IMG/VR virus record: IMGVR_UViG_3300031963_000006
Span: 1 to 64,000 of that record
Length of the DNA stretch: 64,000 nucleotides
Direction: 5' to 3' (one strand)
Of the stretch, positions 12,027-26,353 are shown piece by piece. The notes under the pieces were generated by a model, which worked only from the letters and a program-made list of their open reading frames with translations, made no database searches and was not told the origin of the DNA. Position 1 is the stretch's first letter. The number at the start of each line of letters is the position of its first letter. The translations under genes were made by a program, and so were the position numbers.

Positions 12027-12779
12027 TTATTTTAACATACCTTGGACCAACCCATAATAGATAACTTTATATTTTTTCATAGAGCTTCTAATTTCTTTAG
12101 TACTCAAATTAGTCATTTCTCTCAGAGATAATAAAATAATATTTTTATTAAACTTATTATTTGAAGTCCCTATAAATATGTCATCATAATTTTGAAAAAT
12201 TTCATATAAAGCCTGTCCTAGTTTTAACTCATTTTCGTTTAATGTATCATCCTCCATTAATAACTCTATTTGAATTATAAAATTTTTAATAATTGATTCA
12301 GAATCTAGTGAATCGTTATCAATACTGTATGAAAAATCCGGATTATTTTCCAAATCAGTTGAGATGTCTTCATAAGATATTTTTCTGTTCATATCTTTTT
12401 GGTCTTTTATAATTTGACCCATAAGATAATTTTTACAGATTGTACCAAAATACGAATAAGCCTTCTTTTCTTTAGCCGGCTTAAACTTATCTATTTTGGT
12501 CATTAAAAACGAGTGAGTGTCTATATGAATTTCGTTAAAATCCATATCTTTTCTATATAGCTTATATCTTCTTATTATAGAAGATATCATCTTATCTAAA
12601 GGTTTTCTTAGGTAGTCGTTGTATATTTTGTTTTTTTCTTCAAAAGTACTGGCCGATAAGAATCTTATAACGGCCATTTCTTCTCTTACATCGAAATAAT
12701 TTGCTTGTTTTGGTTTTCTTCCTTTCTTCTTTAACTCAACATTTGTATCACCACTTCCGTTGAATTCTTCAATCATCAA
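12027..12779 (-). CDS. phage RNA polymerase sigma factor (T4 gp55-like late sigma)
   Basis: NYF...AV...N.IYN..L...L.KM.SSII.RY...FLMTKIDKF....KKAYSYFGTICKNYL resembles sigma region 2 and the gp55 NPFAYFT motif. Confidence 0.65.
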   Translation of the reverse strand: MMIEEFNGSGDTNVELKKKGRKPKQANYFDVREEMAVIRFLSASTFEEKNKIYNDYLRKPLDKMISSIIRRYKLYRKDMDFNEIHIDTHSFLMTKIDKFKPAKEKKAYSYFGTICKNYLMGQIIKDQKDMNRKISYEDISTDLENNPDFSYSIDNDSLDSESIIKNFIIQIELLMEDDTLNENELKLGQALYEIFQNYDDIFIGTSNNKFNKNIILLSLREMTNLSTKEIRSSMKKYKVIYYGLVQGMLK

Positions 12780-13579
12780 TTATTGTTTGACTCGTATTTT
12801 ATGGCTCTGTCATTAATAAAGAAATATTCTTTTTTTGCCGATTCAATCCAAAACTTAACTTCATCTTCAACCAAACTTGTCTCACCATTCTTATAGTTCC
12901 AAAATATTGAACCAGTTCTAAAATTGGTATGTTTGTATCCTATTTTAGGAATTGTCATTATTCTAACAGAATTGTATGTCATTCTTAAAAAGAATTCATA
13001 CCCAAATGTTAGTTTAAACGATGATTTCATTAACCCATAGTCGATGAACGCACTTTTACGAATCACCATTCCCGATGTTTGAAAATTTTGGAATTGATGT
13101 AGAGTTTCGTTACTTAGATAACCAATTTCTGATGTCATATTGAGAGCAAAAGTAGCTTCATTGGTAAATCCAACAAATAATCCCTTTTCATCCGTGTCAA
13201 TCACCACAGGTAAAAATGCATCAACATCTTTATAAATTTCTGAATATTTTTTTACATTTTTAAACCATATAGTTGAATATTCATCATCAAATTCAAAAAG
13301 AGATATCCATTCAGACGATGAAGCTCTTACTCCATAGTTAATTTGTTTTGCATAATTTGGTTCATCCGTCCATTTATGTTTTACAACATTTAAATCACCA
13401 AAATCAAAAGAATTCAAAAATTCAACTAGAGATGTTTCATCAGAATGAACAATTACTAATTCATTTATTCGAACTTTTTGAGTTTTGATAGATTCAATAC
13501 ATTTATTGAAATACTCTTCAAACCAAGGAGCCGAAGAAGATTTTATTGGTAAAATTACCGATACATTAAATTTTTCCAT
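12776..13579 (-). CDS. GT2-family glycosyltransferase
   Basis: VSVILPI...CIESIKTQ...ELVIV N-terminus, NYGV..S..EWISLFEFDDEY (DxD-like), and GYEFFLR. Confidence 0.8.
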   Translation of the reverse strand: MEKFNVSVILPIKSSSAPWFEEYFNKCIESIKTQKVRINELVIVHSDETSLVEFLNSFDFGDLNVVKHKWTDEPNYAKQINYGVRASSSEWISLFEFDDEYSTIWFKNVKKYSEIYKDVDAFLPVVIDTDEKGLFVGFTNEATFALNMTSEIGYLSNETLHQFQNFQTSGMVIRKSAFIDYGLMKSSFKLTFGYEFFLRMTYNSVRIMTIPKIGYKHTNFRTGSIFWNYKNGETSLVEDEVKFWIESAKKEYFFINDRAIKYESNNN

Positions 13580-13589
13580 ATTTTTAAAA

Positions 13590-14651
13590 TTATTCTACTG
13601 AAACTAATTTATTTAATTGTTCTTCAAACGAGGTTAATCTTGTATTAATGTAACCTTCAAATAATGAAACTGACTTTTCTTCAAAATATTCTTTCGTTGG
13701 TAGATTTTCTACAGCCTTTAACATCTCTTCATATAATGAATCATTAACATTATCCTCGAGCCAATTTTGTAAGAAATCTGCAACAAAATCCACCATTTGA
13801 ATTTTATTATTAACCCACAAACCATTATCAGAATTCATCCATTGTGGGACCATATTAGGAGTAAGTCCTAAAACAGGTACCCCACACTTCATAGATTCAA
13901 GAGGGAAAGTTCCATAAGAACTAGTTTCATCAATCCAAACGGATAAGAAACAATCTTGAAAAACACTTGCAAATTCTTTTTCAGATAATCCTCTCATATC
14001 TTTGAATGTAACCCATCTATATTGTGGAAACTTTACATAAAAATTCTTAATTAAATTAATACTGTCTCTTTGTTCTCTTGAATGAATTGCGATAATTGGC
14101 TTAGGAGGAAACTGTTGTTTCTCAAAATTATTTGAGATATATGGAGGTAATACATCATATGAAACGTTTCTCATAACGTTTTCTAAATATTCTTTTTGAG
14201 TATCTGAAGTCGTTATACACTTGTAAAATCCAAGTTGATTCCAATTTTCTCCGGGTTGGAGAGTTTCTAAAACATGGTCGTAAGCCTGAGATAATACAAT
14301 TTTACCACAAGGTAATTTTGTTATTTGACTCATAACAAAACCAAATAGTTCAGGAACAATTATAAAATCTTCAGGAGATACCTCCAAATTTTGACCTTCA
14401 ATTGATTTATGAGGTAATTTTTCATCATATTCAGAACCCAACCAACCTGAGACTCCTGTGTAGTCCGTTTTTTCATGAAGCATAACTGGGTTGTATCCCG
14501 AATTTAAAAGAGACATTGCAAATCTGTAAATGTAAGCAACTGATGCCTTAGCATTCCCCTTTGTGTCTTGAACAATAAAGTATATTCTTGATTTTTTATT
14601 CTTTATGTTCTCAATTGATTTTTCTAATTTTGAAATCTGTTCTTGTGTCAT
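13590..14651 (-). CDS. GT-B (GT4-like) glycosyltransferase
   Basis: C-terminal ETSSYGTFPLESMKCGVPV matches the GT4 E.FG...LEAM..G.PV motif. Confidence 0.7.
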   Translation of the reverse strand: MTQEQISKLEKSIENIKNKKSRIYFIVQDTKGNAKASVAYIYRFAMSLLNSGYNPVMLHEKTDYTGVSGWLGSEYDEKLPHKSIEGQNLEVSPEDFIIVPELFGFVMSQITKLPCGKIVLSQAYDHVLETLQPGENWNQLGFYKCITTSDTQKEYLENVMRNVSYDVLPPYISNNFEKQQFPPKPIIAIHSREQRDSINLIKNFYVKFPQYRWVTFKDMRGLSEKEFASVFQDCFLSVWIDETSSYGTFPLESMKCGVPVLGLTPNMVPQWMNSDNGLWVNNKIQMVDFVADFLQNWLEDNVNDSLYEEMLKAVENLPTKEYFEEKSVSLFEGYINTRLTSFEEQLNKLVSVE

Positions 14652-14913: not shown

Positions 14914-15509
14914 TCTGTTATTTGTTTTAATGTTTTTTCGAATTCTTTTATAGAGCGTATCATATATAAGGAGTCGATGTTTTTATTATATTCGGTTTCG
15001 AATTTTATAACTATCTTTTCTTTAGGACACTCTAATAATAAAGAAGGGTTTGATGTAAGTAAAACATCAACCTCGCTCCACATTGAGCTCATAGTAATAT
15101 TACTGTAAAATTTAATTTTCTCAACTAAACATCCAAATTTTGATAGAAAAAATAGAGTTGCCGGTTTTGATTTACTAATTTCATCGGAAACTATTAGTAA
15201 TTCGTGGTTATCCCTTAAATTAATATAAATCTCATTTAAATCATTAAACGTGTTATATTCTGATGATTGAGCGTGACCAAAAATTTCCATTGGAAATTCC
15301 TCATATAAAAAAGAATACATTTCATCATCATCTCTAAAACTAAAATGTTTTTTAATTTCCAAATCTTCGACAGGATAAGTTATTTCATATTTAAAATCAT
15401 TTTCATATTCAATACCTTCTGTCTTATCAATCATAAATTTTTGATAAGTCTGTTCTATTTTGTCCAAAGTATTTCTTAAAACTCCGTTTACCTCAATACC
15501 AATTCTCAT
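14907..15509 (-). CDS. HAD-superfamily 5'(3')-nucleotidase-like protein with degenerate motif I
   Basis: MRIGIEVNGVLRN in place of the canonical I.ID.DGVL; K..FL and DVLL motifs are present later. Confidence 0.55.
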   Translation of the reverse strand: MRIGIEVNGVLRNTLDKIEQTYQKFMIDKTEGIEYENDFKYEITYPVEDLEIKKHFSFRDDDEMYSFLYEEFPMEIFGHAQSSEYNTFNDLNEIYINLRDNHELLIVSDEISKSKPATLFFLSKFGCLVEKIKFYSNITMSSMWSEVDVLLTSNPSLLLECPKEKIVIKFETEYNKNIDSLYMIRSIKEFEKTLKQITEC

Positions 15510-16228
15510 TATTCGTATCTTTTTAGAATTTTACTAATTAATGGATTTCTAACAACATCTTTGTTATCGAATTCAAATACACCAACATCAGACAAATCTT
15601 TAAATTTTTCTATAGCGTCCCAAAGCCCCGAGTGTCTTTTATCTTTATATCTATCAGTTTGTTCTAAATCACCTGAAATAAAAAACTTACTATTGAAACC
15701 TATTCTAGTTAATAGTAGTTTCATCTGATTTGGGGTTGAATTCTGAGCCTCTTCGAAAATAAGAATTGAGTTGTCTATATTCATACCTCTCATATAGGCT
15801 AAAGCGAATACCTCAATTACATCTATTTGTTTTAATTTTTCACGAGCCTCCTTACCAATAATTTTATTCATTAGATAGTAAGATGGGAAAATGTAAGGGT
15901 CTAATTTTTCTTCAACATTACCAGGTAGAGAGCCAAGTTTTTCTTCGGCCTCAACTGCGGGTCTTACAATTATGATTTTTTCATATGGGGTTAATGGGTC
16001 TGATAATAAATCCAAAGCCGCTTTCATTGCGATATAACTTTTACCAACACCTGCGGGACCAGAACAAATTGTAATTTGATTATTTATTAATAAATCGTAA
16101 TATTTTTTTTGATTTTCAGATAAAAATTTTTCCTTTGATTTTTTCTTTATTATTTCAGTGATTTGGTCTTTCCTACTCACATTTTTCTTCGGTTCTTCTT
16201 GAACTGAAATAGGTTTTTTTCTTGTCAT
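15509..16228 (-). CDS. phoH: PhoH-like ATPase
   Basis: Walker A GPAGVGKS, IIIVRPAVE, LGSLPG..EEK.DPY, AYMRG, EEAQN, GDLEQ.D and VVR.PL, all PhoH signatures. Confidence 0.95.
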   Translation of the reverse strand: MTRKKPISVQEEPKKNVSRKDQITEIIKKKSKEKFLSENQKKYYDLLINNQITICSGPAGVGKSYIAMKAALDLLSDPLTPYEKIIIVRPAVEAEEKLGSLPGNVEEKLDPYIFPSYYLMNKIIGKEAREKLKQIDVIEVFALAYMRGMNIDNSILIFEEAQNSTPNQMKLLLTRIGFNSKFFISGDLEQTDRYKDKRHSGLWDAIEKFKDLSDVGVFEFDNKDVVRNPLISKILKRYE

Positions 16229-17202
16229 ATATTAATTTTAAAATAATTCATCCAATAGTCAATCATCTCGTCTAACATAGATTCGAATGTGTAATCATGT
16301 AACCATCCTGTAGATTTAATAAGTTTAGAACTATCTCCTTTTAAGTCATGTAATTCTTCAGGTCTCAAAAATTTTTCATCTTGTTTTACGTATTTTACCC
16401 AATCTAATTCTAGTTTACCAAAAACATATTCACATAATTCTCTAACTGAATGAGATACACCTGTTGCACACACAAAATCGTCAGGTTTATCTAACTGTAG
16501 AATTTCCCACATTGCCTTAACATAATCTTTAGCATGACCCCAATCCCGGGTGGCTTCCAAATTGCCTAATCTTAATTCATTTGATAGACCTAATTTAATT
16601 TTAACCGCTTCTTTACATACTTTATTTGTTACAAAGTTAGTTCCTCTTCTTGGTGATTCATGATTAAACAAAATACCGTTTGAGATAAACATTCCATAAG
16701 AATTACGATAATTCCTACAAATATTATAACTAAAAACTTTAGCACATCCATATGGTGAAACGGGATTCATCGGTGTGGTTTCCCTTTGAAATCCGTCAGA
16801 ATCAATAGAATTACCAAACATTTCAGATGAAGATGCTTGATATATTTTAGTATCAGGTTTAATTAGTTTAACGGTCTCCAATAAATTTAAAGTCCCTAAT
16901 CCGGTTACATTTGCGGTATATATTGGTTGGTCAAATGAAATTCTAACGTGAGATTGTGCGGCTAAATTGTATATCTCATCCGGCATTATTTTTTGGATGA
17001 CCCCAACTAAAGAAGACATATCAGTCAAATCTGCGTATTCTAGCGTTATTTTATTATAGACATTATTTAATCTAGCAGTTTGATTTTCCGCAACGGAATT
17101 CCTTTTTAAAATTCCATATACATCATAACCTTTTTCTATTAAAAATTCGGCCAAGTATGAACCATCTTGACCATTTATACCTGTAATTAATGCTTTTTTC
17201 AT
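16225..17202 (-). CDS. gmd: GDP-mannose 4,6-dehydratase
   Basis: KALITGINGQDGSYLAEFL, EIYNLAAQSHV, YQASSSEMFG, SPYGCAK, NHESPRRG..FVT.K and RDWGHAKDYV. Confidence 0.96.
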   Translation of the reverse strand: MKKALITGINGQDGSYLAEFLIEKGYDVYGILKRNSVAENQTARLNNVYNKITLEYADLTDMSSLVGVIQKIMPDEIYNLAAQSHVRISFDQPIYTANVTGLGTLNLLETVKLIKPDTKIYQASSSEMFGNSIDSDGFQRETTPMNPVSPYGCAKVFSYNICRNYRNSYGMFISNGILFNHESPRRGTNFVTNKVCKEAVKIKLGLSNELRLGNLEATRDWGHAKDYVKAMWEILQLDKPDDFVCATGVSHSVRELCEYVFGKLELDWVKYVKQDEKFLRPEELHDLKGDSSKLIKSTGWLHDYTFESMLDEMIDYWMNYFKINI

Positions 17203-18353
17203 AAATTTTTATTAACTATTTGAATTACTTTATTAATTTCATCATAAGTCATTTGATGATTATTTGGAATATATATACCAAGTTCGTGTACCAATTTTGA
17301 GTTAGGCAAATTTTGTTTACCGTATCTTTCATACCAAAATGGATGCTCGTTAATCGAACCACAAATTAAGGGCCGACATTCAATATTATTTTTGATTAAC
17401 TCTTCAGTTAATGATTTGATATTTTTAGTTATAATGGGAAATGAAAAATTTGATATAAATGAATTTTCAGGAGGGGAAATGCTCCAAAAAGTATTTTTAA
17501 TTTCATTTTTATATCTTTCATAATTTTTATTTCTATTAGTTACAATAATATCTAATTTGTCTAATTGACCTAACCCGATAAAGGCTTGTAAATCTGTTGC
17601 TCTTAAATTAAACCCTGGATAATAAAAAGTATAAAGTGACCTAAAATCATCAATATCATACTTTTTTCTTAAAGATTCTTGTTTTTCTTTAGGTAAGTCT
17701 CTGTCCCATCCGTGTGAACGTATTGATAATAAGATATGATATAAATCTTCATCATCAGTAGATATCATACCTCCCTCAATAGTTGATATATGATGTCCAA
17801 AATAAAATGAAAAAGTTGATAGGTCCCCAAAAGTACCCAATAATTTATCTTCATATTTTGAGCCCATTGATTCACAAGTATCCTCAATTAACAAAATATT
17901 ATTTTCTTCACATAATTTAATAATCTCATTCATATGATTTGGAAAACCTAAGACATGAACCAAAATAATTGCTGATGGACTATCATTTTTAATGATATTT
18001 TTTAGATGGTCAATGTCAAGTCCTAAATTATTCATGTCACATTCACACATTATTGGTTCCATACCTAATTGAATTGCTGGCGTGACGGTCGTGACCCAAG
18101 AAACCGCAGGAACCACTATTTTTTTATTCTTTAATCTACCTGATAATATTAAAGAATATATTGCAGCTAAATTAGCTGACGAACCAGAGTTAACAAATAC
18201 TGAATATTTAACCCCTAACCATTTAGACCATTTTTTTTCAAACTCCTCAGTTAATTTTCCCTTAGTTAATCTTGGATTTGTCTCTAACCAATAGATTAAT
18301 TTTTTTATGTCGTCAAAATTGATAGTATCTTTTACTAATGTAATTTTTTCCAT
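17199..18353 (-). CDS. colD: DegT/DnrJ-fold PLP enzyme, ColD-like GDP-4-keto-6-deoxy-D-mannose 3-dehydratase
   Basis: FVNSGSSANL, LIEDTCES and SFYFGHHISTIEGG (His where aminotransferases have the Schiff-base Lys), plus RSHGW and GFNLRATDLQA. It lacks the Cys-rich Fe-S loop of RfbH/E1. Confidence 0.75.
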   Translation of the reverse strand: MEKITLVKDTINFDDIKKLIYWLETNPRLTKGKLTEEFEKKWSKWLGVKYSVFVNSGSSANLAAIYSLILSGRLKNKKIVVPAVSWVTTVTPAIQLGMEPIMCECDMNNLGLDIDHLKNIIKNDSPSAIILVHVLGFPNHMNEIIKLCEENNILLIEDTCESMGSKYEDKLLGTFGDLSTFSFYFGHHISTIEGGMISTDDEDLYHILLSIRSHGWDRDLPKEKQESLRKKYDIDDFRSLYTFYYPGFNLRATDLQAFIGLGQLDKLDIIVTNRNKNYERYKNEIKNTFWSISPPENSFISNFSFPIITKNIKSLTEELIKNNIECRPLICGSINEHPFWYERYGKQNLPNSKLVHELGIYIPNNHQMTYDEINKVIQIVNKNL

Positions 18354-18354
18354 A

Positions 18355-19281
18355 TTATTTTCTTATATTTTTATAATTTTCCTGAAACCATTTAACTGTT
18401 TTTTCTATACCATCTGATAAATCCGTAAATTCAAAATTTTCCGGTACATTAGATATTGCTGGCTTACGATATTGACCCATTGGTTTAGTATTATCGAAAA
18501 TTATGTTATTAAAATCTATATCTAATTTATTACATATTATTTTAGCAATTTCTAATATAGAATGTTCTTGTTTATTAATTGCCATAAATGGTTCATCACT
18601 TTTCCAATTATCGAGTGACCACATTATTAGCCTTGCCAAATCTTCCGAATATATTACTTGACGTAAAGGACTACCATCTCCCCATATTACCATTTTTTCA
18701 GAGTTTTGTTTAGATAAATGAGCCCTATGTATCATAGCTGGAATCATGTGACCATCATCTAAATGAAAATTATCATTTATTCCATAAACATTTGTAGGGA
18801 CAACAGATACCCAATTAGCGTTTAATACTTTTTTAATAATATTTGTCTGATAACCAGATAATCTTTTCGCATATGAATACCCATGATTTGAAAAGTGAGG
18901 AGGTCCTTGGTCAATTTGATTAGGGGTCAACGGAAATGTTATGTTTTTATCAGGAAAAATACACGTTGATAATAAATTAACAAAATTAGGTATTTCATTT
19001 TTAAAACATGACTCAATAATATTATTATTGATAATAAAGTTATCAATAAAAAAACCTTTATTATTTTTCATATTGGCTTGAACTCCTCCGACCTTAGCCG
19101 CACAATGTATTACAGTGTCAATATTATTATGTTTAACATGATATGTTATATAATCAATTGTTTTTTTATTATCTAGAAGATTTATATCTTCTTTTGTGTG
19201 ATAGATTTGATTATCACCTAATATTTTTTTTAAAGCAGACCCTACCAATCCGTTAGAACCTGTCACTAAAATTTTATTCAT
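18355..19281 (-). CDS. GDP-L-fucose synthase / ColC-like epimerase-reductase (extended SDR)
   Basis: ILVTGSNGLVGSA, HCAAKVGG, STCIFP (catalytic Cys), GYSYAKR (YxxxK), PTNVYG..DNF...GHMIP (catalytic His) and WGDGSPLR. Confidence 0.9.
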   Translation of the reverse strand: MNKILVTGSNGLVGSALKKILGDNQIYHTKEDINLLDNKKTIDYITYHVKHNNIDTVIHCAAKVGGVQANMKNNKGFFIDNFIINNNIIESCFKNEIPNFVNLLSTCIFPDKNITFPLTPNQIDQGPPHFSNHGYSYAKRLSGYQTNIIKKVLNANWVSVVPTNVYGINDNFHLDDGHMIPAMIHRAHLSKQNSEKMVIWGDGSPLRQVIYSEDLARLIMWSLDNWKSDEPFMAINKQEHSILEIAKIICNKLDIDFNNIIFDNTKPMGQYRKPAISNVPENFEFTDLSDGIEKTVKWFQENYKNIRK

Positions 19282-20063
19282 AATTTAATCCAATTTTCGC
19301 ATCCTATTTCTGAAGTATCTAAAAACTGAACTCCAAACCAGTTAGATGGATATATTACTTTTTTATTATCATTATTATTTAACCAAGCTCCCCACCAACT
19401 AAAACTTGAGTTCGCAATTATATTATTCTTACACATTGACATTAGATATAAATCTTGATAGTCTATGTTTCCATTAATAAACGTTTTATTTTTAATAAAC
19501 CCTAAATTTTCTTTACACCAATCAATGTCGTCAGAAAAAATTAAGTAGTCCAAATCCTCACCAATTTTTGACACGGATTCTTTATAATAGTTTATAGTTT
19601 GTACCGGGTGAAAATGAGATTTTTGAACATAATTACCACGTCTAACATGTAGTGAACAAGTGTTTCCAGATAGAACATCTGAATATTTCATAGTAATAAA
19701 TTCATATGTTTCAGAGTCAATCTCAAATAAATTTAAAATATCTTGTCTTAAATTTTTAAAATATTTTTCATTTTGATAATAACCTTTTAATTTTAGATTA
19801 TTTTTAGGGTTTGGTATTTCAGAATATTGTATGGGTTGAATCGGTTCATGAGACGAATAGTTTGAGTACTCTGAAACAAATTTTATTTTTCTAAATATAT
19901 TATTATAGTATAAATCAATTGGGCTATGAATTATAGATATATCCGAAATATCAACAACCATTTCTCTATTATCTCTAATTGATGTGTAATATGAAGCCGC
20001 TATTTGAAATATGTAGTTTCCTAACCCCCCTTTTAATTGAGGAGACACCAATAATTTTTCCAT
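19278..20063 (-). CDS. GT11 alpha-1,2-fucosyl/colitosyltransferase
   Basis: GGLGNYIFQIA, LKGYYQNEKYF, SLHVRRGNY, YLIFSDDIDWCKENL and MCKNNIIANSSFSWWGAWL. Confidence 0.92.
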   Translation of the reverse strand: MEKLLVSPQLKGGLGNYIFQIAASYYTSIRDNREMVVDISDISIIHSPIDLYYNNIFRKIKFVSEYSNYSSHEPIQPIQYSEIPNPKNNLKLKGYYQNEKYFKNLRQDILNLFEIDSETYEFITMKYSDVLSGNTCSLHVRRGNYVQKSHFHPVQTINYYKESVSKIGEDLDYLIFSDDIDWCKENLGFIKNKTFINGNIDYQDLYLMSMCKNNIIANSSFSWWGAWLNNNDNKKVIYPSNWFGVQFLDTSEIGCENWIKL

Positions 20064-20065
20064 AA

Positions 20066-20407
20066 TTAAAATCCCTTATAATATTTAACAGAATCTTCAA
20101 TCAATGATTTATTAGTTAATATAGAATTCTCAATCATACGGTTTACCGCTTGTACATATTTAGGTCTTTTAACTTTAAAACAAATATCAATTTTACGTTT
20201 TAAATCGGCAATTTCCGAATCATTTTCCGCAACACTGATAGAGTCCTCAAGATACCACATGCGACAATGTAAAATAGCCAATTTTTCAATCACCTCTCCT
20301 ATATTGTCAGTTTCAATTAAATCATCAGGAATGGTAACATTTTTACTATTAGTTAGTATCTGATTTACTTTATTTTTAATAATTTCTTCAATTCTCTCTC
20401 CAATCAT
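20066..20407 (-). CDS. DUF4254-like helical protein (sugar-cluster associated)
   Basis: IGEVIEKLAILHCRMWYLED...LKRKID resembles the DUF4254 core. Confidence 0.5.
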   Translation of the reverse strand: MIGERIEEIIKNKVNQILTNSKNVTIPDDLIETDNIGEVIEKLAILHCRMWYLEDSISVAENDSEIADLKRKIDICFKVKRPKYVQAVNRMIENSILTNKSLIEDSVKYYKGF

Positions 20408-20408
20408 T

Positions 20409-21071
20409 TTAATATATTGTTATAAATTTATTTTTACCTTGGCTATTCAATGATTCGTTGTAACCTCTGATATATTGGTGATAATAAAATGAAGGTTTTT
20501 CAAAAACATAAGAATTAATCAAACACTTAATACTTGATTCCATTATGTGTACCTCCTTTGAATTTTCAATTATTTTAAGAATATCAAAAATTCCAAATTC
20601 AATTGGATTTTCAATTATTTTTAAATCGGTTCTAATTTTATTTTTATCCACTTTACCGTGAACAAAAATGTATTCTTCATTGTTTGGATTAACATAATTA
20701 AAGGCGTCGTCTTCTTTATTAGGGTCTCTTAAAAATAAAAATTTAGAAAAACGATATTCAAATGGCATTTCTGATATTTTATAAAATGCCTCATCAAACT
20801 TTGTCATCGGGAATTTCATTAATTTATCAAATCCAATCTTAATTACGTCATATTGAATATTATTTTCAATAATATATCTGTTAACTTCCCAGTCTTCACC
20901 GACAGGTAATACTTTAATATCTTCGTCATCTCGGTACATATATTTGACATTTTCATAGTTATGTGGTTTACAAAAAACTATCACTTTACCATAAATTTCT
21001 TTATAATGTCTGACCATACCATTACATATTATATGGTCACCTAATCCTAAATGGTGATAAATATATTTCAT
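20409..21071 (-). CDS. putative glycosyltransferase (GT-B-like, HHLGLGD motif)
   Basis: YHHLGLGDHIICNG start (compare the GT9-type xGDxx motif) and a late HIMESS motif; sits inside the sugar cluster. Confidence 0.45.
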   Translation of the reverse strand: MKYIYHHLGLGDHIICNGMVRHYKEIYGKVIVFCKPHNYENVKYMYRDDEDIKVLPVGEDWEVNRYIIENNIQYDVIKIGFDKLMKFPMTKFDEAFYKISEMPFEYRFSKFLFLRDPNKEDDAFNYVNPNNEEYIFVHGKVDKNKIRTDLKIIENPIEFGIFDILKIIENSKEVHIMESSIKCLINSYVFEKPSFYYHQYIRGYNESLNSQGKNKFITIY

Positions 21072-21694
21072 TGTGCCCTGCTAAATAAATTATTCATGTC
21101 ATTTATAGTTTTTATATAATGAAAAGTAATATAATTTGAAGTATCGTCAACAGGGATATTATAAAAACTAGGTGGTTGAGAATTAAAAAAATTATAGTCA
21201 ATTGATTTTATACCTAATTCTCTTAATAATAAACCTAGTGTAACATCTGAATAACCTGTGTTTAAAATTTTTAAGTGTCTAGTTATTTTGTGTAATAATT
21301 CTGTGTGTATTAGATATCCCGCCCCTCCTGAACAATAATTAAGACTTTTATCAACAGACCAAGTACCATTAAGAACTGAGCCGTGAACTGAATCTTTATC
21401 CAAAAGGTCCACAAAATTTTCTAATTTTTTAGTATTAACAAATGTATCATCATCACAAAAGAAAAACCATTCATAATCTTTTACATTATTTGAGACATAA
21501 TGTAAAACATTAATATGTTTATCTTCATTTGAATGATAATCTTTTCTATCCGATACCTTAATTATGTTTTTTTCAGTATCTTCGTGGTCAGAATAGAACA
21601 AACAATTAACATCTTTACCCCAAGTTTTTTTAACATTAAAATATCTATCAGGATTCATAGACCCATGTAATAATACATATAATATCTTTTTCAT
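21068..21694 (-). CDS. Fringe/GT31-like glycosyltransferase (beta-1,3-Gal/GlcNAc transferase type)
   Basis: WFFFCDDDTFVN, YCSGGAGYLI, SDVTLGLLL and ITFHYI are Fringe/C1GalT-type motifs. No TM helix. Confidence 0.8.
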   Translation of the reverse strand: MKKILYVLLHGSMNPDRYFNVKKTWGKDVNCLFYSDHEDTEKNIIKVSDRKDYHSNEDKHINVLHYVSNNVKDYEWFFFCDDDTFVNTKKLENFVDLLDKDSVHGSVLNGTWSVDKSLNYCSGGAGYLIHTELLHKITRHLKILNTGYSDVTLGLLLRELGIKSIDYNFFNSQPPSFYNIPVDDTSNYITFHYIKTINDMNNLFSRAQ

Positions 21695-22350
21695 ATTACC
21701 GACAAATAATCTTGACCGACAGGTTTATCAAACTCATCAATTCTATCCCCAATAAATCTACCCATTTCTCTTTTAATCGGAAAAGGTTTTTTTTCAAAAA
21801 ATTCATCATGGGTAATTTTATCATTTTCAAATAAAGAAAAAACAGTTTTTAGAAAAGTTTGGTCTGAACCGTATGATAAATTTTTATTTTTTACAAAATC
21901 GTTTATCATATCAGTTATAGATATAAAACCTTTTTTAATTCCCCACATTCCCCCTAAAATACCTAATCTATCACTCCCGAAAGGAATTCCATGGGCAGGA
22001 TGGTCTCTCATAACATGTAAAGATTTTCCACTATTAATCCATTCATCAACCGCCATTTTTTCTCTAACAGTTATTCTTGAATCGGCATCTCTAAAAACAC
22101 AATATTCTGAGTCAGGTAAGTCTATTGCAAAAAATCTCCAAAACATCCCATAAAGTTTTTTTTCGGTTACATCGATTGTTAAAACTCCCAAATCGTTTAA
22201 TTTATTTATAGTTTCTTTTGGTACTGTATTATCATAATAAACGACCATTTGCCAATCTGAATATATGGTTTTCCATAATTCGGCATTTCTAATTGCCCCA
22301 ACATTATATATGGGTTTATCCCCCCATAAACTAAAACTCAAATATTTCAT
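21691..22350 (-). CDS. putative GT-A glycosyltransferase
   Basis: SFSLWG start, MFWRFFAID, VFRDADSR (DxD), HVMRDHPAH and ILGGMWG. Confidence 0.55.
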   Translation of the reverse strand: MKYLSFSLWGDKPIYNVGAIRNAELWKTIYSDWQMVVYYDNTVPKETINKLNDLGVLTIDVTEKKLYGMFWRFFAIDLPDSEYCVFRDADSRITVREKMAVDEWINSGKSLHVMRDHPAHGIPFGSDRLGILGGMWGIKKGFISITDMINDFVKNKNLSYGSDQTFLKTVFSLFENDKITHDEFFEKKPFPIKREMGRFIGDRIDEFDKPVGQDYLSVI

Positions 22351-23765
22351 TAATTCTCAACTAATTCTTTTATATTTTTATCAAAATCAACATAATGGTC
22401 TTGAGTTCCATGTGAATTCATTTGATAATGCTTTATTAACCCTTGAGTAATAAACGGATTATGTTTGTACATTAAACAATAAAAAGTTGTAGACCTTTCG
22501 TGTCCGTGACCTGCTGTTTTAGAGTGTTTAATTAATTCCGACAGAGGTTCAAACCACTTCATATAATCATTAAAAAATGATACTTTCATAGTACAATTAC
22601 TAGTGGTAGACCAAACCAACTTAGGGTTTTGTCTCATATAAAACCTAATTGTTTTTTCAAGGTCGACTTTATAAACCTGTTTGATTGCTCCAAATAATTC
22701 CTCAACCCAATTTTTATTATCTATAAAATGATAATTCGAACAAGGGAATGGTATGTAACCAATCATATTTTGATTTTCATACATAAATTTATCTATGATT
22801 TGTTCTAAATTTTTATTTAAAATAACATCATACTCAAATAGATTTACATATGGAGTTTTTATTAGGTTGTTTTTCCACAACGCATACCATCCTGTGTATG
22901 CATTTATATTTGGATACTCCTCTAAATTATATGGTAAATTACGAGCAATAATAATATTTGAATTATCCTCTATTTTATCAACAGGTCTATTACCTAAAAA
23001 GACATATCTATATTTTTTTAAATTACTAAATTTACCTGATTTTTCGTAATCAATTATAATATCTTGGTCGTGACAAAATATGAAAGTTTCACAAACATTA
23101 TTGTTAGTAATATCTAAAGGTAAATTATTTTTAAATTTTTCTGAGAAAAATATTCGATTATTTTCCCATGTATCATTTGTCATACCAACAGATAAGTGAG
23201 TAACCCTAACATCTGTAACAATTCCTATTTTAACACCATCTAAATAATTTGGAACACAAAACGACAAATCGTAAAAATGGAATCCATCGAATTCCTCATC
23301 AAATTTGTGTTTGATTTTTGTTTTATCCAAAACCATAAATAATCCATCAATCAATACAACCTCTTCAACATTACTAATTGCTTTTGAATAAGTACTAGTC
23401 CATTTTTTTCCTTCATGTTTATGGTTTACAATACCATACATTGTTTGAGATACTTCCCACCATTTACCTGATTCAGGTAAGTATTTAGAACCCGCGAGAC
23501 CAATTACACCAAATTCAGGACTCTTATTAAAATGTTTTATTATTTTTTTACCCCAATTATCCGTATCAAATTCTAAATCATCGTGACACAACACTACAAT
23601 GTCATGTTGTGATTTTTCTAAAATTTCATTATAAGTTTTAGGTAGGGATTTTTCACCATTATTAACAACTTCAATAATTTCAACATTTTTCAATCCACAA
23701 GATTTTTTCAATATTTCAACATATTGTGGATTTGAGTTTCTTGTACTATATCCTATTGTAATCAT
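22350..23765 (-). CDS. two-domain glycosyltransferase (N-terminal GT2-like; second GT-like domain)
   Basis: SLPKTYNEILEKS..DIVVLCHDDL and FDEEFDGFHFYDLSFC in the first domain; YTGWYALWKN...YVNLFEYD in the second. Confidence 0.7.
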   Translation of the reverse strand: MITIGYSTRNSNPQYVEILKKSCGLKNVEIIEVVNNGEKSLPKTYNEILEKSQHDIVVLCHDDLEFDTDNWGKKIIKHFNKSPEFGVIGLAGSKYLPESGKWWEVSQTMYGIVNHKHEGKKWTSTYSKAISNVEEVVLIDGLFMVLDKTKIKHKFDEEFDGFHFYDLSFCVPNYLDGVKIGIVTDVRVTHLSVGMTNDTWENNRIFFSEKFKNNLPLDITNNNVCETFIFCHDQDIIIDYEKSGKFSNLKKYRYVFLGNRPVDKIEDNSNIIIARNLPYNLEEYPNINAYTGWYALWKNNLIKTPYVNLFEYDVILNKNLEQIIDKFMYENQNMIGYIPFPCSNYHFIDNKNWVEELFGAIKQVYKVDLEKTIRFYMRQNPKLVWSTTSNCTMKVSFFNDYMKWFEPLSELIKHSKTAGHGHERSTTFYCLMYKHNPFITQGLIKHYQMNSHGTQDHYVDFDKNIKELVEN

Positions 23766-24358: not shown

Positions 24359-25083
24359 TTTAATTCTTTTAATTTTTTTATTATATCAATCAAAACTTGA
24401 ACATCACGTTCACAATATTCACTTATTTCTTTTAATTTTCTATCAATCCAATATGAATCATGAACCATATCTCCTGTTATCTCACCTTCTTTTGATGTTG
24501 GTATGTCCATACAAGAACAAAGCAAATCTAATGACCCTATTGAACTATACGCCCCATATTGCCAAATTTCCTTGGTATCGATTGCCTTAATCTCCCAAGG
24601 CTTTGTGTCATATGAAGGTAGAATTGATGGGGGCATTAGACCATTGATAATCATACGTTTGGCTAACATGGGTATATCAAAATTTTTAAGATTATGACCA
24701 CATAAGTGAAAATCCAATTTACCACATCTGTCCAATAATTTTTGAACATCCTTTAGTAACTCTAACTCATCGTCACCTGAAAATGTTTGCATTTTCGTTT
24801 CACCCTTGTCTGTAACAAATGCAACACTAACACAAACAATCTTTGAAAATTCTGGAACTAACGCGGCTCTTTTTGCAAATATTTTATCTCGTTTTTTTTC
24901 CTCCTGTTCTATATTACTTACCGTATTATCATCTTCAGGAAATCTTTTTAAAAACCAATCATAGTAATTTATAAATTGAGTTGCCACTTTAGGATTTAAT
25001 GCCTGACATGTAGTGAAATCAGGACATCCCCCAACCGTTTCAATATCAATGAATAATATTTTGGTGATAGGGATTTTTATCAT
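24355..25083 (-). CDS. stand-alone DnaQ/PolB-like 3'-5' exonuclease
   Basis: FIDIET (ExoI), GHNLKNFDIPML (ExoII) and EYCERDV (ExoIII). Confidence 0.85.
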   Translation of the reverse strand: MIKIPITKILFIDIETVGGCPDFTTCQALNPKVATQFINYYDWFLKRFPEDDNTVSNIEQEEKKRDKIFAKRAALVPEFSKIVCVSVAFVTDKGETKMQTFSGDDELELLKDVQKLLDRCGKLDFHLCGHNLKNFDIPMLAKRMIINGLMPPSILPSYDTKPWEIKAIDTKEIWQYGAYSSIGSLDLLCSCMDIPTSKEGEITGDMVHDSYWIDRKLKEISEYCERDVQVLIDIIKKLKELK

Positions 25084-26300
25084 TGTACCAAAGTTTTATA
25101 CCATTCAGCTCTATTTTTTGTAACGTTTCTCAAATCATAAGTGTCCTTTACAGTTTCATAAAGTCGTTCACCCATGTCGGTAATCATACTTGGATTTTGA
25201 ATGAGTTTCTTAATGTACTTAGACCAATCACTATGATTTTTATGTTCATCAACAAGTAAAGCGTTTCCATCAACAAAGTTACCATTTTTCAAACAATGTT
25301 TCAAATCTATGGTATATGGTCCAATCTCAGAAGCAATAAGTGCCTTTTTATAAAAACCCGCTTCGATAACCTTAAGTTGAGATTTCATTCTATTAAAGAT
25401 ATGGTTTTTGATTGGGGCCAACGAAATGTCCAACTTAGAGTAGTTCATTGCGTATGTAGTTACAGGTTTTGTCCAAACTCTACGATATGGTAAACTAGTT
25501 TCATTTGGGAATTCAACATCTTTAAATTCCATCAAAAATTTCTTATACTCGTCACCAACAATTTCGTACTTGTTTGTGAAAATTTCTTCATATCTAACCC
25601 AAACAGTTTCGTGAGGAAGAATATCTCTACGTTTTTCTTCTCCTGTTTTTGGATTAATTTCGGTCATTGTACCACGAGTATCAAACCCACAAATAACATA
25701 CTGAACTTTATCATTTATTTCTTTCCCATTTTTCTCAACCATTCCATCCAATAACATTAAATCATGGAGGTGTGAGGAACCACCTAGCCATCCTACTCTA
25801 ATTCTTTCGGATTCTAATGTTGGTTGTCTGAATTGAGGTTCACTTGGGTCAATGGCATTTGGGAAAATAATAACATTTTTGTTTATTTTCTTGATTTCAT
25901 CGGCAAAAATTGTTGTTGTGGTTGTTACGTAACTAGCCTCACGTAGATTGGCAACAATCTTTTCGTTCAATTTATGATTAACAATTAACTGATGAATTGG
26001 ATGTTCCTTTGTAGGTAACCAATAATCGTCAATATCCACAACAACGATAATACCTAATGATTTAAGTTGTCGGATGAGTTGGGGTACAATATCGTAGTTT
26101 TGTCCTATACTTCTGTGAGCGTGAACTATTTGGTATTGTTTCCAATAATTTACATCGTTTATTCTTGGTTCATAATCTATATCAACATGAAAATCATCAG
26201 GATATAGATTTTGTAACATGACATGAGGGTCCAATGACCTAAATTTACCAACACCTGTTCTATCCGATGGTAGAACTAAAACATTAATTTTTTCTTTCAT
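25080..26300 (-). CDS. GT-B (GT4-like) glycosyltransferase
   Basis: VVVDIDDYW, VTTTT..FA, PNAID, GWLGGSSHLHD and DISLAPI....FNRMKSQLKVIEAG. ATG at 26300 (MKEKINVL) preferred over track start 26348. Confidence 0.8.
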   Translation of the reverse strand: MKEKINVLVLPSDRTGVGKFRSLDPHVMLQNLYPDDFHVDIDYEPRINDVNYWKQYQIVHAHRSIGQNYDIVPQLIRQLKSLGIIVVVDIDDYWLPTKEHPIHQLIVNHKLNEKIVANLREASYVTTTTTIFADEIKKINKNVIIFPNAIDPSEPQFRQPTLESERIRVGWLGGSSHLHDLMLLDGMVEKNGKEINDKVQYVICGFDTRGTMTEINPKTGEEKRRDILPHETVWVRYEEIFTNKYEIVGDEYKKFLMEFKDVEFPNETSLPYRRVWTKPVTTYAMNYSKLDISLAPIKNHIFNRMKSQLKVIEAGFYKKALIASEIGPYTIDLKHCLKNGNFVDGNALLVDEHKNHSDWSKYIKKLIQNPSMITDMGERLYETVKDTYDLRNVTKNRAEWYKTLVQ

Positions 26301-26353
26301 AATTAAAAATAATAATGAAAGTATACGACGAAAATTACATTTTATCAACTATG

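What the first reader, a model, noticed from the sequence alone, without database searches (positions are those of the whole stretch)
16225..20063. Apparently complete GDP-L-colitose pathway plus colitosyl/fucosyltransferase in a phage
Seen: gmd, then a DegT-fold enzyme with SFYFGHHISTIEGG (His in the usual Lys position, no Fe-S Cys loop), then an Fcl/ColC-like reductase, then GT11, tightly packed with overlaps or 1-nt gaps. Known: ColD uses His instead of Lys and makes the 3-deoxy intermediate; ColC is an Fcl homolog; E. coli O55 uses a GT11-type colitosyltransferase. Inference: the product is the rare 3,6-dideoxyhexose colitose rather than perosamine or only fucose, which is unusual for a virus.
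Basis: partly seen in the sequence, partly recalled or inferred. Interest (0 to 1): 0.75.

Follow-up and report, generated by a model that had tools for sequence, protein, structure and literature searches.

The report
Phage-borne GDP-colitose sugar pathway cassette
A 321-kb freshwater jumbo phage carries four tightly packed genes that most likely turn the host's GDP-mannose into the rare sugar GDP-L-colitose and attach it to a glycan. The cassette is real, but it is common among environmental phages, where it has been annotated only in generic terms.

Summary
Window 16225-20063 (minus strand) holds four intact genes that overlap by 4 nt or sit 1 nt apart: a GT11 transferase, an Fcl-family reductase, a DegT-fold enzyme and Gmd.

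- **DegT enzyme:** it is a ColD-type 3-dehydratase. It has His where aminotransferases have Lys and lacks the E1 Fe-S cysteine loop. Its best solved relative is E. coli ColD. In a careful tree it groups with E. coli O55/O111 ColD, and a bona fide E1/RfbH falls outside that clade.
- **Reductase:** it keeps every Fcl catalytic residue but is not an orthologue of E. coli ColC. Reductases that sit beside ColD genes are polyphyletic, so sequence alone cannot tell ColC from Fcl.
- **Why I assign ColC function:** it is the only Fcl-like gene in this complete genome. A complete relative carries one non-orthologous reductase beside the same ColD-Gmd pair.
- **GT11:** it is 32% identical to the O55 colitosyltransferase WbgN. 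WbgN also accepts GDP-fucose, so the donor sugar remains open.
- **"Unusual for a virus" is overstated:** cultured Synechococcus phages of the ACG-2014f group carry the same four genes, and more than 575 IMG/VR stretches encode ColD-type enzymes.

The phage encodes no Wzx, Wzy or ManC, so the acceptor is unknown. I rate this a new member of a known kind, of moderate interest.

The parts
19278..20063 (-). GT11 glycosyltransferase (261 aa). It is a putative alpha-1,2 colitosyl/fucosyltransferase and the first gene of the four-gene run.
   Evidence: Pfam Glyco_transf_11 scores 98.7 bits against a cut-off of 23.9, and it matches PHROG 2644 'glycosyltransferase' at 2.9e-55. It is 32% identical over its full length (E 1e-39) to the E. 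coli O55:H7 GT11 protein annotated as alpha-1,2-fucosyltransferase, taken here to be WbgN. The HVRRGNY motif aligns with HIRRGDY. dN/dS against relatives is 0.21-0.31.
18355..19281 (-). Fcl-family SDR (short-chain dehydrogenase) epimerase/reductase (308 aa). I infer it is the GDP-L-colitose synthase, i.e. has ColC function.
   Evidence: It matches Pfam Epimerase at 2.7e-37. On NCBIfam Fcl (NF047922) it scores 186 bits, below the cut-off of 500. The best solved relative is human GDP-fucose synthase at 1.9e-65, against 1.6e-38 for E. coli Fcl. Ser105, Cys107, Tyr135, Lys139 and His178 are all conserved. It is the only Fcl-like gene in the complete genome. In 13 distinct related viral loci its orthologue lies upstream of ColD, directly adjacent in about half of them and separated by up to about 2 kb in the others. 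dN/dS is 0.07-0.10.
17199..18353 (-). ColD-type PLP/PMP-dependent GDP-4-keto-6-deoxy-D-mannose 3-dehydratase (384 aa).
   Evidence: The best solved relative is E. coli ColD (2gms) at 4.8e-74, against 8.4e-47 for E1 and 2.3e-32 for perosamine synthase. His187 aligns with ColD His188, and there is no E1 Cys loop. The RfbH model scores 233 bits against a cut-off of 423, whereas a true RfbH scores 736 bits. In the careful tree it lies inside the clade with E. coli O55/O111 ColD (support 99/98), with E1 outside. dN/dS is 0.07-0.13.
16225..17202 (-). GDP-mannose 4,6-dehydratase, Gmd (325 aa).
   Evidence: Pfam GDP_Man_Dehyd matches over its full length at 387 bits. TIGR01472 gmd scores 384 bits, just under the equivalog cut-off of 415. 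Solved GMDs from plants, humans and bacteria match at 1e-87 to 1e-95. The gene overlaps ColD by 4 nt. dN/dS is 0.06-0.09.
15509..16228 (-). PhoH-like ATPase, the next gene downstream. It overlaps Gmd by 4 nt and is a conserved neighbour, not part of the sugar pathway.
   Evidence: Pfam PhoH matches at 4.2e-63. It lies next to Gmd in most related viral loci.
20066..23765 (-). Upstream part of the glycosylation island. It holds a conserved 113-aa ORF, a 220-aa ORF, a Fringe-like GT (21068-21694), a 219-aa ORF and a GT2_5-family GT (22350-23765).
   Evidence: Pfam Fringe matches at 1.9e-12 and Glyco_tranf_2_5 at 9e-32. The other three ORFs have no Pfam or PHROG hit. Several of these genes are syntenic in relatives.
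12776..14651 (-). Downstream part of the island: a GT2 glycosyltransferase (12776-13579) and a 353-aa ORF of unknown function.
   Evidence: Pfam Glycos_transf_2 matches at 1.1e-6. The 353-aa ORF has no hit.
25080..26348 (-). A further phage-type glycosyltransferase (422 aa) at the upstream edge of the island.
   Evidence: It matches PHROG 7162 'glycosyltransferase' at 1.1e-40.

Best explanation
This is a phage-borne auxiliary sugar cassette in a freshwater jumbo myovirus-like phage. It starts from the host's GDP-mannose.

1. Gmd makes GDP-4-keto-6-deoxy-D-mannose.
2. The ColD-type enzyme removes the 3-hydroxyl. It uses PMP, with His187 as the acid/base, and glutamate regenerates the PMP. It needs no Fe-S cluster and no partner reductase.
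3. The single Fcl-family reductase epimerises C5 and reduces C4 with NADPH, giving GDP-L-colitose (3-deoxy-L-fucose).
4. The GT11 enzyme then transfers colitose, and possibly fucose, to a galactoside-like acceptor. That acceptor is part of a glycan built by the six or more neighbouring glycosyltransferases.

**Shown:** gene presence and integrity; ColD-type identity from residues and phylogeny; conservation under purifying selection; one reductase per genome.

**Inferred:** that the reductase accepts the 3-deoxy substrate; which donor the GT11 uses; what the acceptor is. The phage encodes no flippase, polymerase or initiating transferase. The glycan must therefore be built either on host lipid-linked or LPS intermediates or on soluble (virion) proteins.
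For: - **ColD identity:** (details in parts and Membership tests).
- **Gmd:**
- **Gene order:** reductase then ColD, overlapping or adjacent, as in E. coli O55 and O111.
- **One reductase per genome:** this complete genome has exactly one Fcl-like gene. In each of the 45 related viral loci there is at most one Fcl-like reductase next to the conserved ColD-Gmd pair. It is either the window's type, upstream of ColD, or a type only 40-46% identical, downstream of ColD. A 100%-complete relative of 308 kb that carries the second type also has exactly one. This non-orthologous displacement implies that both types serve ColD.
- **Chemistry:** if an Fcl enzyme applies its normal steps to the 3-deoxy intermediate, the product is colitose (established chemistry; PMC8987622). 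Related GDP-sugar C4-reductases do accept 3-deoxy substrates (PMC10680097).
- **Selection:** dN/dS is 0.06-0.13 for Gmd, ColD and the reductase.
- **GT11:** it resembles WbgN, whose natural donor is GDP-colitose.
- **Expression (weak):** exact-match short contigs covering ColD, the reductase and GT11 occur in two lake metatranscriptomes.
Against: - The reductase is not an orthologue of characterised ColC. It lies in the other deep clade of the family and is closest to eukaryote-type GDP-fucose synthase.
- It scores below the curated Fcl cut-off, and no curated ColC model was among the NCBIfam matches.
- A related phage-like contig pairs a similar reductase with Gmd but without ColD. That is a plain fucose module.
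- ColD Ser187 is Gly in the window enzyme.
- GT11 enzymes, WbgN included, accept GDP-fucose.
- There is no biochemical data. The RNA evidence could be DNA carry-over, as the tool itself warns.
Confidence: 0.65

Rival explanations
1. Mixed output. The single reductase is a promiscuous Fcl that competes with ColD for GDP-4-keto-6-deoxymannose. The cassette then makes both GDP-L-fucose and GDP-L-colitose, and the GT11 transfers whichever is present. This is a variant of the best explanation rather than its opposite.
For: - The reductase is closest to bona fide GDP-fucose synthases.
- Characterised E. coli Fcl clusters at 65% identity with reductases that sit beside ColD in other bacteria.
- WbgN tolerates both donors.
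- Similar viral reductases occur with Gmd alone.
Against: ColD is strongly conserved and overlaps Gmd, which points to selection for flux into the 3-deoxy branch. Nothing tested here excludes a mixture.
Confidence: 0.2
2. Fucose only. The reductase and GT11 form a GDP-fucose / fucosyltransferase module. The ColD product is then either a dead end or is used by an unidentified enzyme.
For: The reductase is of the GFUS (eukaryote-type GDP-fucose synthase) kind. GT11 is classically a fucosyltransferase family. GT11 and the window-type reductase co-occur in several relatives.
Against: - The genome has no other candidate 4-reductase for the ColD product.
- The window-type reductase occurs next to ColD without GT11 in six relatives.
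- In other relatives a different reductase type takes the place next to the same ColD-Gmd pair.
- ColD is under strong purifying selection.
Confidence: 0.07
3. A different 3,6-dideoxy sugar. One version is a GDP-3,6-dideoxyheptose made from host GDP-heptose, as in Campylobacter jejuni HS:5. The other is a D-configured 3,6-dideoxyhexose, made if the reductase does not epimerise C5.
For: C. jejuni uses a ColD-like dehydratase that depends on PLP and glutamate, acting downstream of a Gmd-like heptose 4,6-dehydratase (PMC10680097). The window Gmd scores just under the gmd equivalog cut-off.
Against: - The Gmd matches solved GDP-mannose dehydratases at about 1e-95.
- The phage has no sugar-nucleotidyltransferase of its own.
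- The reductase keeps the Cys/His epimerisation pair.
- C. jejuni uses separate epimerase and reductase proteins, which are not seen here.
Confidence: 0.05
4. The DegT enzyme is an aminotransferase that makes GDP-perosamine or another 4-amino sugar.
For: It has the DegT fold, and PHROG and GenBank annotate relatives as 'aminotransferase'.
Against: The catalytic Lys is replaced by His. Converting ColD into an aminotransferase took the S187N/H188K double mutant, whose chain is in the PDB list. Perosamine synthase is a much weaker match at 2.3e-32. The enzyme sits inside the dehydratase clade.
Confidence: 0.02

Closest known systems
E. coli O55 / O111 (and Yersinia pseudotuberculosis) GDP-L-colitose pathway: Gmd, ColD (WbdK), ColC (WbdJ) and the colitosyltransferase WbgN
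   Same: - The same enzyme families are present.
- The colC-colD gene order is the same, with overlapping genes.
- ColD has the same catalytic His and lacks an Fe-S cluster.
- The transferase is GT11 and 32% identical.
   Different: - The cassette is carried by a phage.
- ColD is only 37-40% identical to the E. coli enzyme, and Ser187 is Gly.
- The reductase is not orthologous to ColC. It belongs to the other deep clade of the family, the eukaryote-like GFUS type.
- The phage has no ManB, ManC, Wzx or Wzy.
Glycan gene cluster of Synechococcus phage ACG-2014f (Atlauavirus), genes gp223-gp226, and the S-CAM7 '3-dehydrase'
   Same: The same four families are packed tightly in a T4-like phage: Gmd, an Fcl-like reductase, a ColD-type DegT enzyme with the HH motif, and GT11. 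More glycosyltransferases lie beside them.
   Different: - Gene order differs: Gmd comes first and GT11 last.
- ColD is 37.5% identical.
- Its reductase falls in the bacterial Fcl/ColC clade, not the window's clade.
- These are marine cyanophages of about 40% GC.
- The genes are annotated only as epimerase, aminotransferase or glycosyltransferase, or as a CDP-sugar dehydrase.
E1 (RfbH/DdhC), the CDP-6-deoxy-L-threo-D-glycero-4-hexulose 3-dehydrase of the abequose / tyvelose / paratose pathways
   Same: It has the same fold, the same His-for-Lys substitution and the same C3 deoxygenation chemistry up to the enamine intermediate (PMC8987622).
   Different: E1 has a four-Cys [2Fe-2S] site, needs the reductase E3 and acts on CDP-sugars. 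The window enzyme lacks those Cys residues, scores 233 bits against a cut-off of 423 on the RfbH model, and falls outside E1 in the tree.
GDP-L-fucose synthase (Fcl/WcaG; GFUS/TSTA3), including the Gmd plus GMER pair of chloroviruses (the chlorovirus example is from my own knowledge)
   Same: The reductase shares the full catalytic set and is most similar to human GFUS. A virus-encoded Gmd plus Fcl pair is an established precedent.
   Different: Here a ColD gene sits between Gmd and the reductase, and it is conserved across the lineage. That diverts the 4-keto intermediate to the 3-deoxy branch.

Membership tests
ColD (GDP-4-keto-6-deoxy-D-mannose 3-dehydratase) | DegT / aspartate-aminotransferase fold with a catalytic His in place of the Schiff-base Lys | tested here: met
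   Pfam DegT matches at 9.5e-73. His187 aligns with ColD His188, the position identified by the H188N and H188K mutant chains. The HH pair is invariant in alignment A1.
ColD (GDP-4-keto-6-deoxy-D-mannose 3-dehydratase) | No [2Fe-2S] cysteine motif, so the enzyme is self-sufficient (unlike E1 and SpnQ) | tested here: met
   The E1 loop DCYCAPGCDNTC aligns with a Cys-free stretch of the window protein. The rule comes from PMC8987622.
ColD (GDP-4-keto-6-deoxy-D-mannose 3-dehydratase) | Groups with characterised ColD and excludes E1 | tested here: met
   In the careful LG+C20 tree, a clade of 37 rows holding E. coli O55/O111 ColD and the window enzyme has support 99/98. The RfbH equivalog is its sister.
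ColD (GDP-4-keto-6-deoxy-D-mannose 3-dehydratase) | GDP-sugar context, with an adjacent Gmd, and conserved GDP-binding arginines | tested here: met
   Gmd overlaps the gene by 4 nt. Gmd lies within the fetched locus in 23 of the 25 rows of the window's viral clade. Arg218 and Arg327 align with ColD Arg219 and Arg331 and are invariant. The role of these arginines is recalled from the ColD structure papers, not tested here.
ColD (GDP-4-keto-6-deoxy-D-mannose 3-dehydratase) | Ser187 next to the catalytic His | tested here: not met
   The window has Gly186 at this position. The phage relatives and ACG-2014f also have Gly, and the scan pattern was [GS]HH. Gly is small like Ser, so this is probably tolerated, but that has not been tested.
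ColD (GDP-4-keto-6-deoxy-D-mannose 3-dehydratase) | Catalytic activity: 3-deoxygenation with PMP and glutamate | not testable with these tools
   This needs an enzyme assay.
E1 / RfbH (CDP-sugar 3-dehydrase) | Curated NCBIfam equivalog score and the Fe-S cysteines | tested here: not met
   The window enzyme scores 233 bits against a cut-off of 423. A true RfbH in a Fonsibacter genome scores 736 bits, while ColD-like proteins score 175-227 bits. The Cys loop is absent.
GDP-perosamine synthase / sugar aminotransferases | Catalytic Lys that forms the internal aldimine | tested here: not met
   His occupies that position. Perosamine synthase matches only at 2.3e-32.
ColC (GDP-L-colitose synthase) | Fcl-family SDR with the Ser/Tyr/Lys triad plus the Cys/His epimerisation pair | tested here: met
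   Ser105, Cys107, Tyr135, Lys139 and His178 are conserved alongside E. coli ColC and Fcl. The feature is shared with Fcl, so it does not discriminate between the two.
ColC (GDP-L-colitose synthase) | Orthology with biochemically characterised ColC | tested here: not met
   The window reductase lies in the other deep clade (split supported 100/97). E. coli ColC and E. coli Fcl share a clade, so ColC is not a sequence-defined family.
ColC (GDP-L-colitose synthase) | Genomic coupling to ColD, and being the only available 4-reductase | tested here: met
   The gene lies 1 nt upstream of ColD. It is the only Fcl-like gene in the complete genome. Relatives each have at most one reductase, of either type, per locus, and one per complete genome.
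ColC (GDP-L-colitose synthase) | Turnover of GDP-4-keto-3,6-dideoxy-D-mannose to GDP-L-colitose | not testable with these tools
   This needs an enzyme assay.
Fcl (GDP-L-fucose synthase, NCBIfam NF047922 equivalog) | Score above the curated cut-off | tested here: not met
   It scores 186 bits against a cut-off of 500. It nevertheless matches solved GDP-fucose synthases at up to 1.9e-65.
[quoted passage not shown] | Full-length match to the family model and to solved enzymes | tested here: inconclusive
   Pfam GDP_Man_Dehyd matches at 387 bits over positions 1-332 of 332, and solved GMDs match at about 1e-95. TIGR01472 scores 384 bits, just below its equivalog cut-off of 415.
GT11 (alpha-1,2-fucosyl/colitosyltransferases) | Pfam GT11 above the cut-off, plus the HxRRGxY donor motif | tested here: met
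   It scores 98.7 bits against a cut-off of 23.9. HVRRGNY aligns with HIRRGDY of the O55 enzyme.
GT11 (alpha-1,2-fucosyl/colitosyltransferases) | Donor specificity for GDP-colitose | not testable with these tools
   WbgN uses GDP-colitose naturally and tolerates GDP-fucose (PMC12723683). Sequence cannot decide this.

The most novel reading that the evidence does not exclude
The colitose cassette and its six or more neighbouring glycosyltransferases form a phage-autonomous cytoplasmic glycosylation system. It would decorate the jumbo phage's own virion proteins with a glycan that contains a 3,6-dideoxyhexose, much as giant viruses of eukaryotes glycosylate their capsids and fibrils, rather than remodelling host LPS.

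A linked biochemical novelty is that ordinary Fcl-type enzymes act as colitose synthases whenever a ColD is present. 'ColC' would then be a role recruited many times, not a family.
Probability: 0.25. Interest if true: 0.75.

Novelty: new member of a known kind. Interest (0 to 1): 0.45.

Why it matters
- **Biology.** Colitose is known as a bacterial O-antigen and capsule sugar. I found no paper that describes a virus-encoded pathway for it or for any other 3,6-dideoxyhexose. If the prediction holds, phages carry and spread the ability to make an antigenically dominant rare sugar. They may use it to change the infected cell's surface, which would affect superinfection exclusion and grazing or lectin recognition, or to coat their own particles.
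- **Annotation.** The cassette recurs in cultured cyanophages and in hundreds of uncultivated phage contigs, so a better annotation would apply widely. These genes are now labelled 'aminotransferase', 'epimerase' or 'RfbH/CDP-...-3-dehydrase'.
- **Enzymology.** Reductases that partner ColD are polyphyletic, and characterised Fcl nests among them. This gives a testable prediction: Fcl enzymes in general accept the 3-deoxy intermediate. That would also simplify enzymatic synthesis of GDP-colitose.

Tried and rejected
- **Near-identical GenBank phage:** a megablast of the region found nothing. A neighbouring 537-aa ORF has no phage match at protein level. There is no close cultured relative.
- **Giant eukaryotic virus:** I considered this because of the genome size, the low GC and the human-like reductase. 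I rejected it: there is no NCLDV capsid hit, the terminase is T4-like, PhoH is present and the genes overlap.
- **Deciding ColC versus Fcl by phylogeny:** this failed. There is no ColC clade, and the catalytic residues are identical in both.
- **Names for the nearest reductase clusters:** uninformative. All are metagenomic and carry at most a generic or automatic label such as 'GDP-L-fucose synthase'. Their contexts were mixed: one ColD-linked, one Gmd-only, one too short to tell.
- **Membrane machinery (Wzx, Wzy, WaaL, WecA):** a hydropathy scan of all ORFs of 100 aa or more found no real gene with 8 or more hydrophobic segments.
- **ManC:** absent.
- **Island ORFs of 113, 220, 219, 353 and 200 aa:** no Pfam or PHROG hit.
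- **PDB match for GT11:** none.
- **Wu et al. 2016 on WbgN:** the paper is not held, so I took WbgN's properties from PMC12723683.
- **Metatranscriptomes:** only five or six short contigs per run, and DNA carry-over cannot be excluded.

Full report
**1. Observation**

One search shows four intact minus-strand ORFs exactly at the stated limits. In order of transcription they are:

| Gene | Coordinates | Length |
|---|---|---|
| GT11 | 20063..19278 | 261 aa |
| SDR (short-chain dehydrogenase) reductase | 19281..18355 | 308 aa |
| DegT-fold enzyme | 18353..17199 | 384 aa |
| Gmd | 17202..16225 | 325 aa |

The junctions are a 4-nt overlap, a 1-nt gap and a 4-nt overlap. A further 4-nt overlap leads into a PhoH gene. 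Pfam assigns all four with E-values from 1e-28 to 1e-116.

The window is bases 133-64132 of an IMG/VR virus record of 321,403 bp. The record has a 259-bp direct terminal repeat, is rated 100% complete and has 32.7% GC. It has a T4-like large terminase and no NCLDV (giant-virus) capsid hit. Its nearest terminases are an uncultured huge phage at 29% identity and Flavobacterium phages at 26%. So it is a jumbo tailed phage with no close cultured relative. The same sequence occurs in many lake and freshwater metagenomes.

**2. The DegT enzyme is a ColD-type 3-dehydratase**

- **Solved structures.** The best match is E. coli O55 ColD (2gms, 4.8e-74, 253 bits). E1 is well behind (3bcx, 8.4e-47, 163 bits), and GDP-perosamine synthase further still (2.3e-32).
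- **Catalytic residue.** The alignment puts the first His of FYFGHHIST on ColD His188. The H188N, H188K and S187N/H188K mutant chains in the PDB list make that position unambiguous.
- **No Fe-S site.** The cysteine-rich loop of E1 aligns with a stretch that has no cysteine. A review states that E1 and SpnQ carry a four-Cys [2Fe-2S] site that ColD lacks, and that ColD regenerates PMP with glutamate alone (PMC8987622).
- **RfbH model.** The curated NCBIfam RfbH model gives 233 bits against a cut-off of 423. In a Fonsibacter genome the same model gives 736 bits to a true RfbH and 210 bits to that genome's ColD-like gene, so the model separates the two classes.
- **Tree.** I added that RfbH to a careful LG+C20 tree. 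A 3-dehydratase clade (support 100/99) splits into E1 and a ColD clade (99/98). The ColD clade holds E. coli O55 and O111 ColD and the window enzyme.
- **GDP-binding arginines.** The two arginines I recall as GDP-binding in ColD (Arg219, Arg331) are invariant.
- **One departure.** ColD Ser187 is Gly here, and also in the other phage enzymes.

**3. Gmd and GT11**

Gmd matches solved GDP-mannose 4,6-dehydratases at about 1e-95. It falls just under the TIGR01472 equivalog cut-off, 384 bits against 415.

I fetched the O-antigen locus of E. coli O55:H7 CB9615. It carries colC and colD in the same overlapping order as the window. It also carries a GT11 protein annotated as alpha-1,2-fucosyltransferase, which I take to be WbgN. 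Pfam confirms that protein is GT11. The phage GT11 is 32% identical to it over the full length (E 1e-39) and shares the HxRRGxY motif. [quoted passage not shown] Homology therefore cannot fix the donor.

**4. The reductase is the weak link**

It has the whole Fcl catalytic set: Ser105, Cys107, Tyr135, Lys139 and His178. Its identities are:

| Compared with | Identity | Score or E-value |
|---|---|---|
| E. coli O55 ColC | 36% | 150 bits |
| E. coli Fcl | 32% | 136 bits |
| Human GDP-fucose synthase | closest solved relative | 1.9e-65 |

I built two trees: a 187-row tree that included the 150 nearest 50%-cluster representatives, and a careful 35-row tree. They show two deep clades, split with support 100/97.

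- One clade holds E. coli Fcl, both E. coli ColCs and the ACG-2014f reductase.
- The other clade holds the window reductase.
- Characterised E. coli Fcl groups (support 100/99, 65% identity) with reductases that sit beside ColD in Nocardioides and a Rhodobacteraceae genome.

Reductases that partner ColD are thus polyphyletic.

**5. What context adds**

A scan of IMG/VR with the ColD protein found 45 related loci at 41-100% identity, most of them 73-100%. In nearly all of them ColD and Gmd stay together at 73-88% identity. Each locus has at most one Fcl-like reductase.

- **Window type:** 68-100% identical and upstream of ColD; 13 distinct sequences. It is directly adjacent in about half of them and separated by up to about 2 kb in the others, and six loci have it without GT11.
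- **Second type:** only 40-46% identical and downstream of ColD.

The window's complete genome has exactly one Fcl-like gene. So does a 100%-complete 308-kb relative that carries the second type. This is non-orthologous displacement at a fixed functional slot. Whichever reductase is present must process what ColD makes.

If an Fcl enzyme applies its usual C5 epimerisation and C4 reduction to the 3-deoxy ketone, the product is L-colitose, which is 3-deoxy-L-fucose. Work on C. jejuni shows that related GDP-sugar C4-reductases accept 3-deoxy substrates (PMC10680097).

Pairwise dN/dS is 0.06-0.13 for Gmd, ColD and the reductase, and 0.2-0.3 for GT11. dS is near saturation, so these values are approximate.

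Short exact-match contigs covering ColD, the reductase and GT11 occur in two lake metatranscriptomes. The tool warns that DNA may be present in such libraries.

**6. Surroundings and mechanism**

The four genes sit in a leftward-transcribed island, about 12.8-26.3 kb in the window.

- **Recognisable glycosyltransferases:** at least four more, namely GT2, Fringe-like, GT2_5 and PHROG 7162.
- **Other ORFs:** several conserved ORFs with no family hit.
- **Interspersed genes:** PhoH, a dUTPase and a PolB-like exonuclease.
- **Missing from the genome:** there is no sugar-nucleotidyltransferase and no polytopic membrane protein. That means no ManC, Wzx, Wzy, WaaL or WecA.

The pathway therefore starts from host GDP-mannose. 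The glycan must be assembled either on host lipid-linked or LPS intermediates or on soluble proteins. I cannot tell these apart. Surface remodelling is the conventional reading for phage 'LPS genes' (my own knowledge), and virion glycosylation is the more novel one.

**7. How unusual is it?**

- **Cultured cyanophages.** About 50 GenBank records of Synechococcus phage ACG-2014f carry Gmd, an Fcl-like reductase, a ColD-type enzyme with the HH motif and a GT11 in a row. They are annotated as 'nucleotide-sugar epimerase', 'aminotransferase' and 'glycosyltransferase'.
- **Other GenBank phages.** S-CAM7 carries a homologue annotated as a CDP-sugar 3-dehydrase, and a 642-kb uncultured phage has one too.
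- **IMG/VR.** Among 79 loci examined (78 of the best 80 plus one fetched in the earlier search), 39 have Gmd and a reductase within 5 kb, and 20 of those also have a GT11.
- **Bacterial relatives.** These include an Acidobacteria MAG (metagenome-assembled genome) with ColD 59% and Gmd 74% identical, Fonsibacter, Pelagibacterales and others.
- **Literature.** Searches for colitose with phage or virus, and for 3-dehydratase with phage, found no description of a virus-encoded colitose pathway.

**8. Verdict**

- **ColD-type dehydratase next to Gmd:** well supported (about 0.85).
- **GDP-L-colitose as a product:** probable (about 0.65, possibly alongside GDP-fucose).
- **Colitosyl transfer by the GT11:** plausible but untested.

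This is a new, phage-borne member of a known bacterial pathway. It is widespread and under-annotated rather than singular, and its interest is moderate. It yields two clean testable predictions: phages make colitose, and Fcl-type enzymes in general can serve as colitose synthases.

Noticed in passing
related loci L020-L039 and L048-L052 compared with L014-L019, L031, L040 and L042-L047; window 18355-19281: Relatives that share the same ColD-Gmd pair carry one of two non-orthologous Fcl-like reductases, 40-46% identical to each other, at different positions: upstream or downstream of ColD. No locus has both. This is a clean case of non-orthologous gene displacement inside a phage sugar cassette.
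   Followed up: yes
L148 (G003:C1:1031504-1032793) and L065 (G003:C1:1043295-1044416): A 'Candidatus Fonsibacter' (freshwater SAR11) genome holds a bona fide E1/RfbH (736 bits) and a ColD-type dehydratase with Gmd and a reductase, about 11 kb apart. That suggests two different 3,6-dideoxyhexose routes in a streamlined genome of about 1.2 Mb.
   Followed up: partly
L059 (Acidobacteria MAG, contig LNDP01000015.1), 7980-11990: A bacterial contig of 53% GC encodes a Gmd 74% identical and a ColD 59% identical to those of this 33%-GC phage. These are much closer than other bacterial homologues, which points to fairly recent exchange between phage and bacterium.
   Followed up: partly
window 39378-41156 (+): A 592-aa ORF has a reprolysin-like (M12B) zinc metallopeptidase domain (Pfam Reprolysin_5, 7.8e-13). 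It lies within a run of very large plus-strand ORFs that are probably virion proteins.
   Followed up: no
window 43203-50120 and 50213-55510 (+): Two giant ORFs of 2305 and 1765 aa lie back to back. I did not scan them against any family library. The ORFs of 1152, 848 and 1097 aa just upstream have no Pfam hit.
   Followed up: no
window 20066-20407 (-): A 113-aa ORF with no family hit is 71-77% identical across most relatives and usually lies within about 1 kb upstream of ColD or of the reductase-ColD pair. It may be an unrecognised component or regulator of the glycan genes.
   Followed up: partly
L140-L142 (contexts of P0128): Another phage-like contig, with a Thy1-like gene, a GH108 lysozyme and a nucleotide kinase, carries a related reductase directly followed by Gmd and has no ColD. 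This is a plain GDP-fucose module in a different phage.
   Followed up: partly
L143-L145 (contexts of P0278; Tara and other marine assemblies): Marine virus-like contigs show dUTPase, reductase, DegT (393 aa) and Gmd in a row, followed by a methyltransferase. The colC-colD-gmd order also exists in marine lineages, with a different downstream tailoring gene.
   Followed up: no
window 59822-62668 (+): A 948-aa ORF matches phage tail-fibre PHROGs (about 1e-14). This is the only recognisable structural gene in the window.
   Followed up: no
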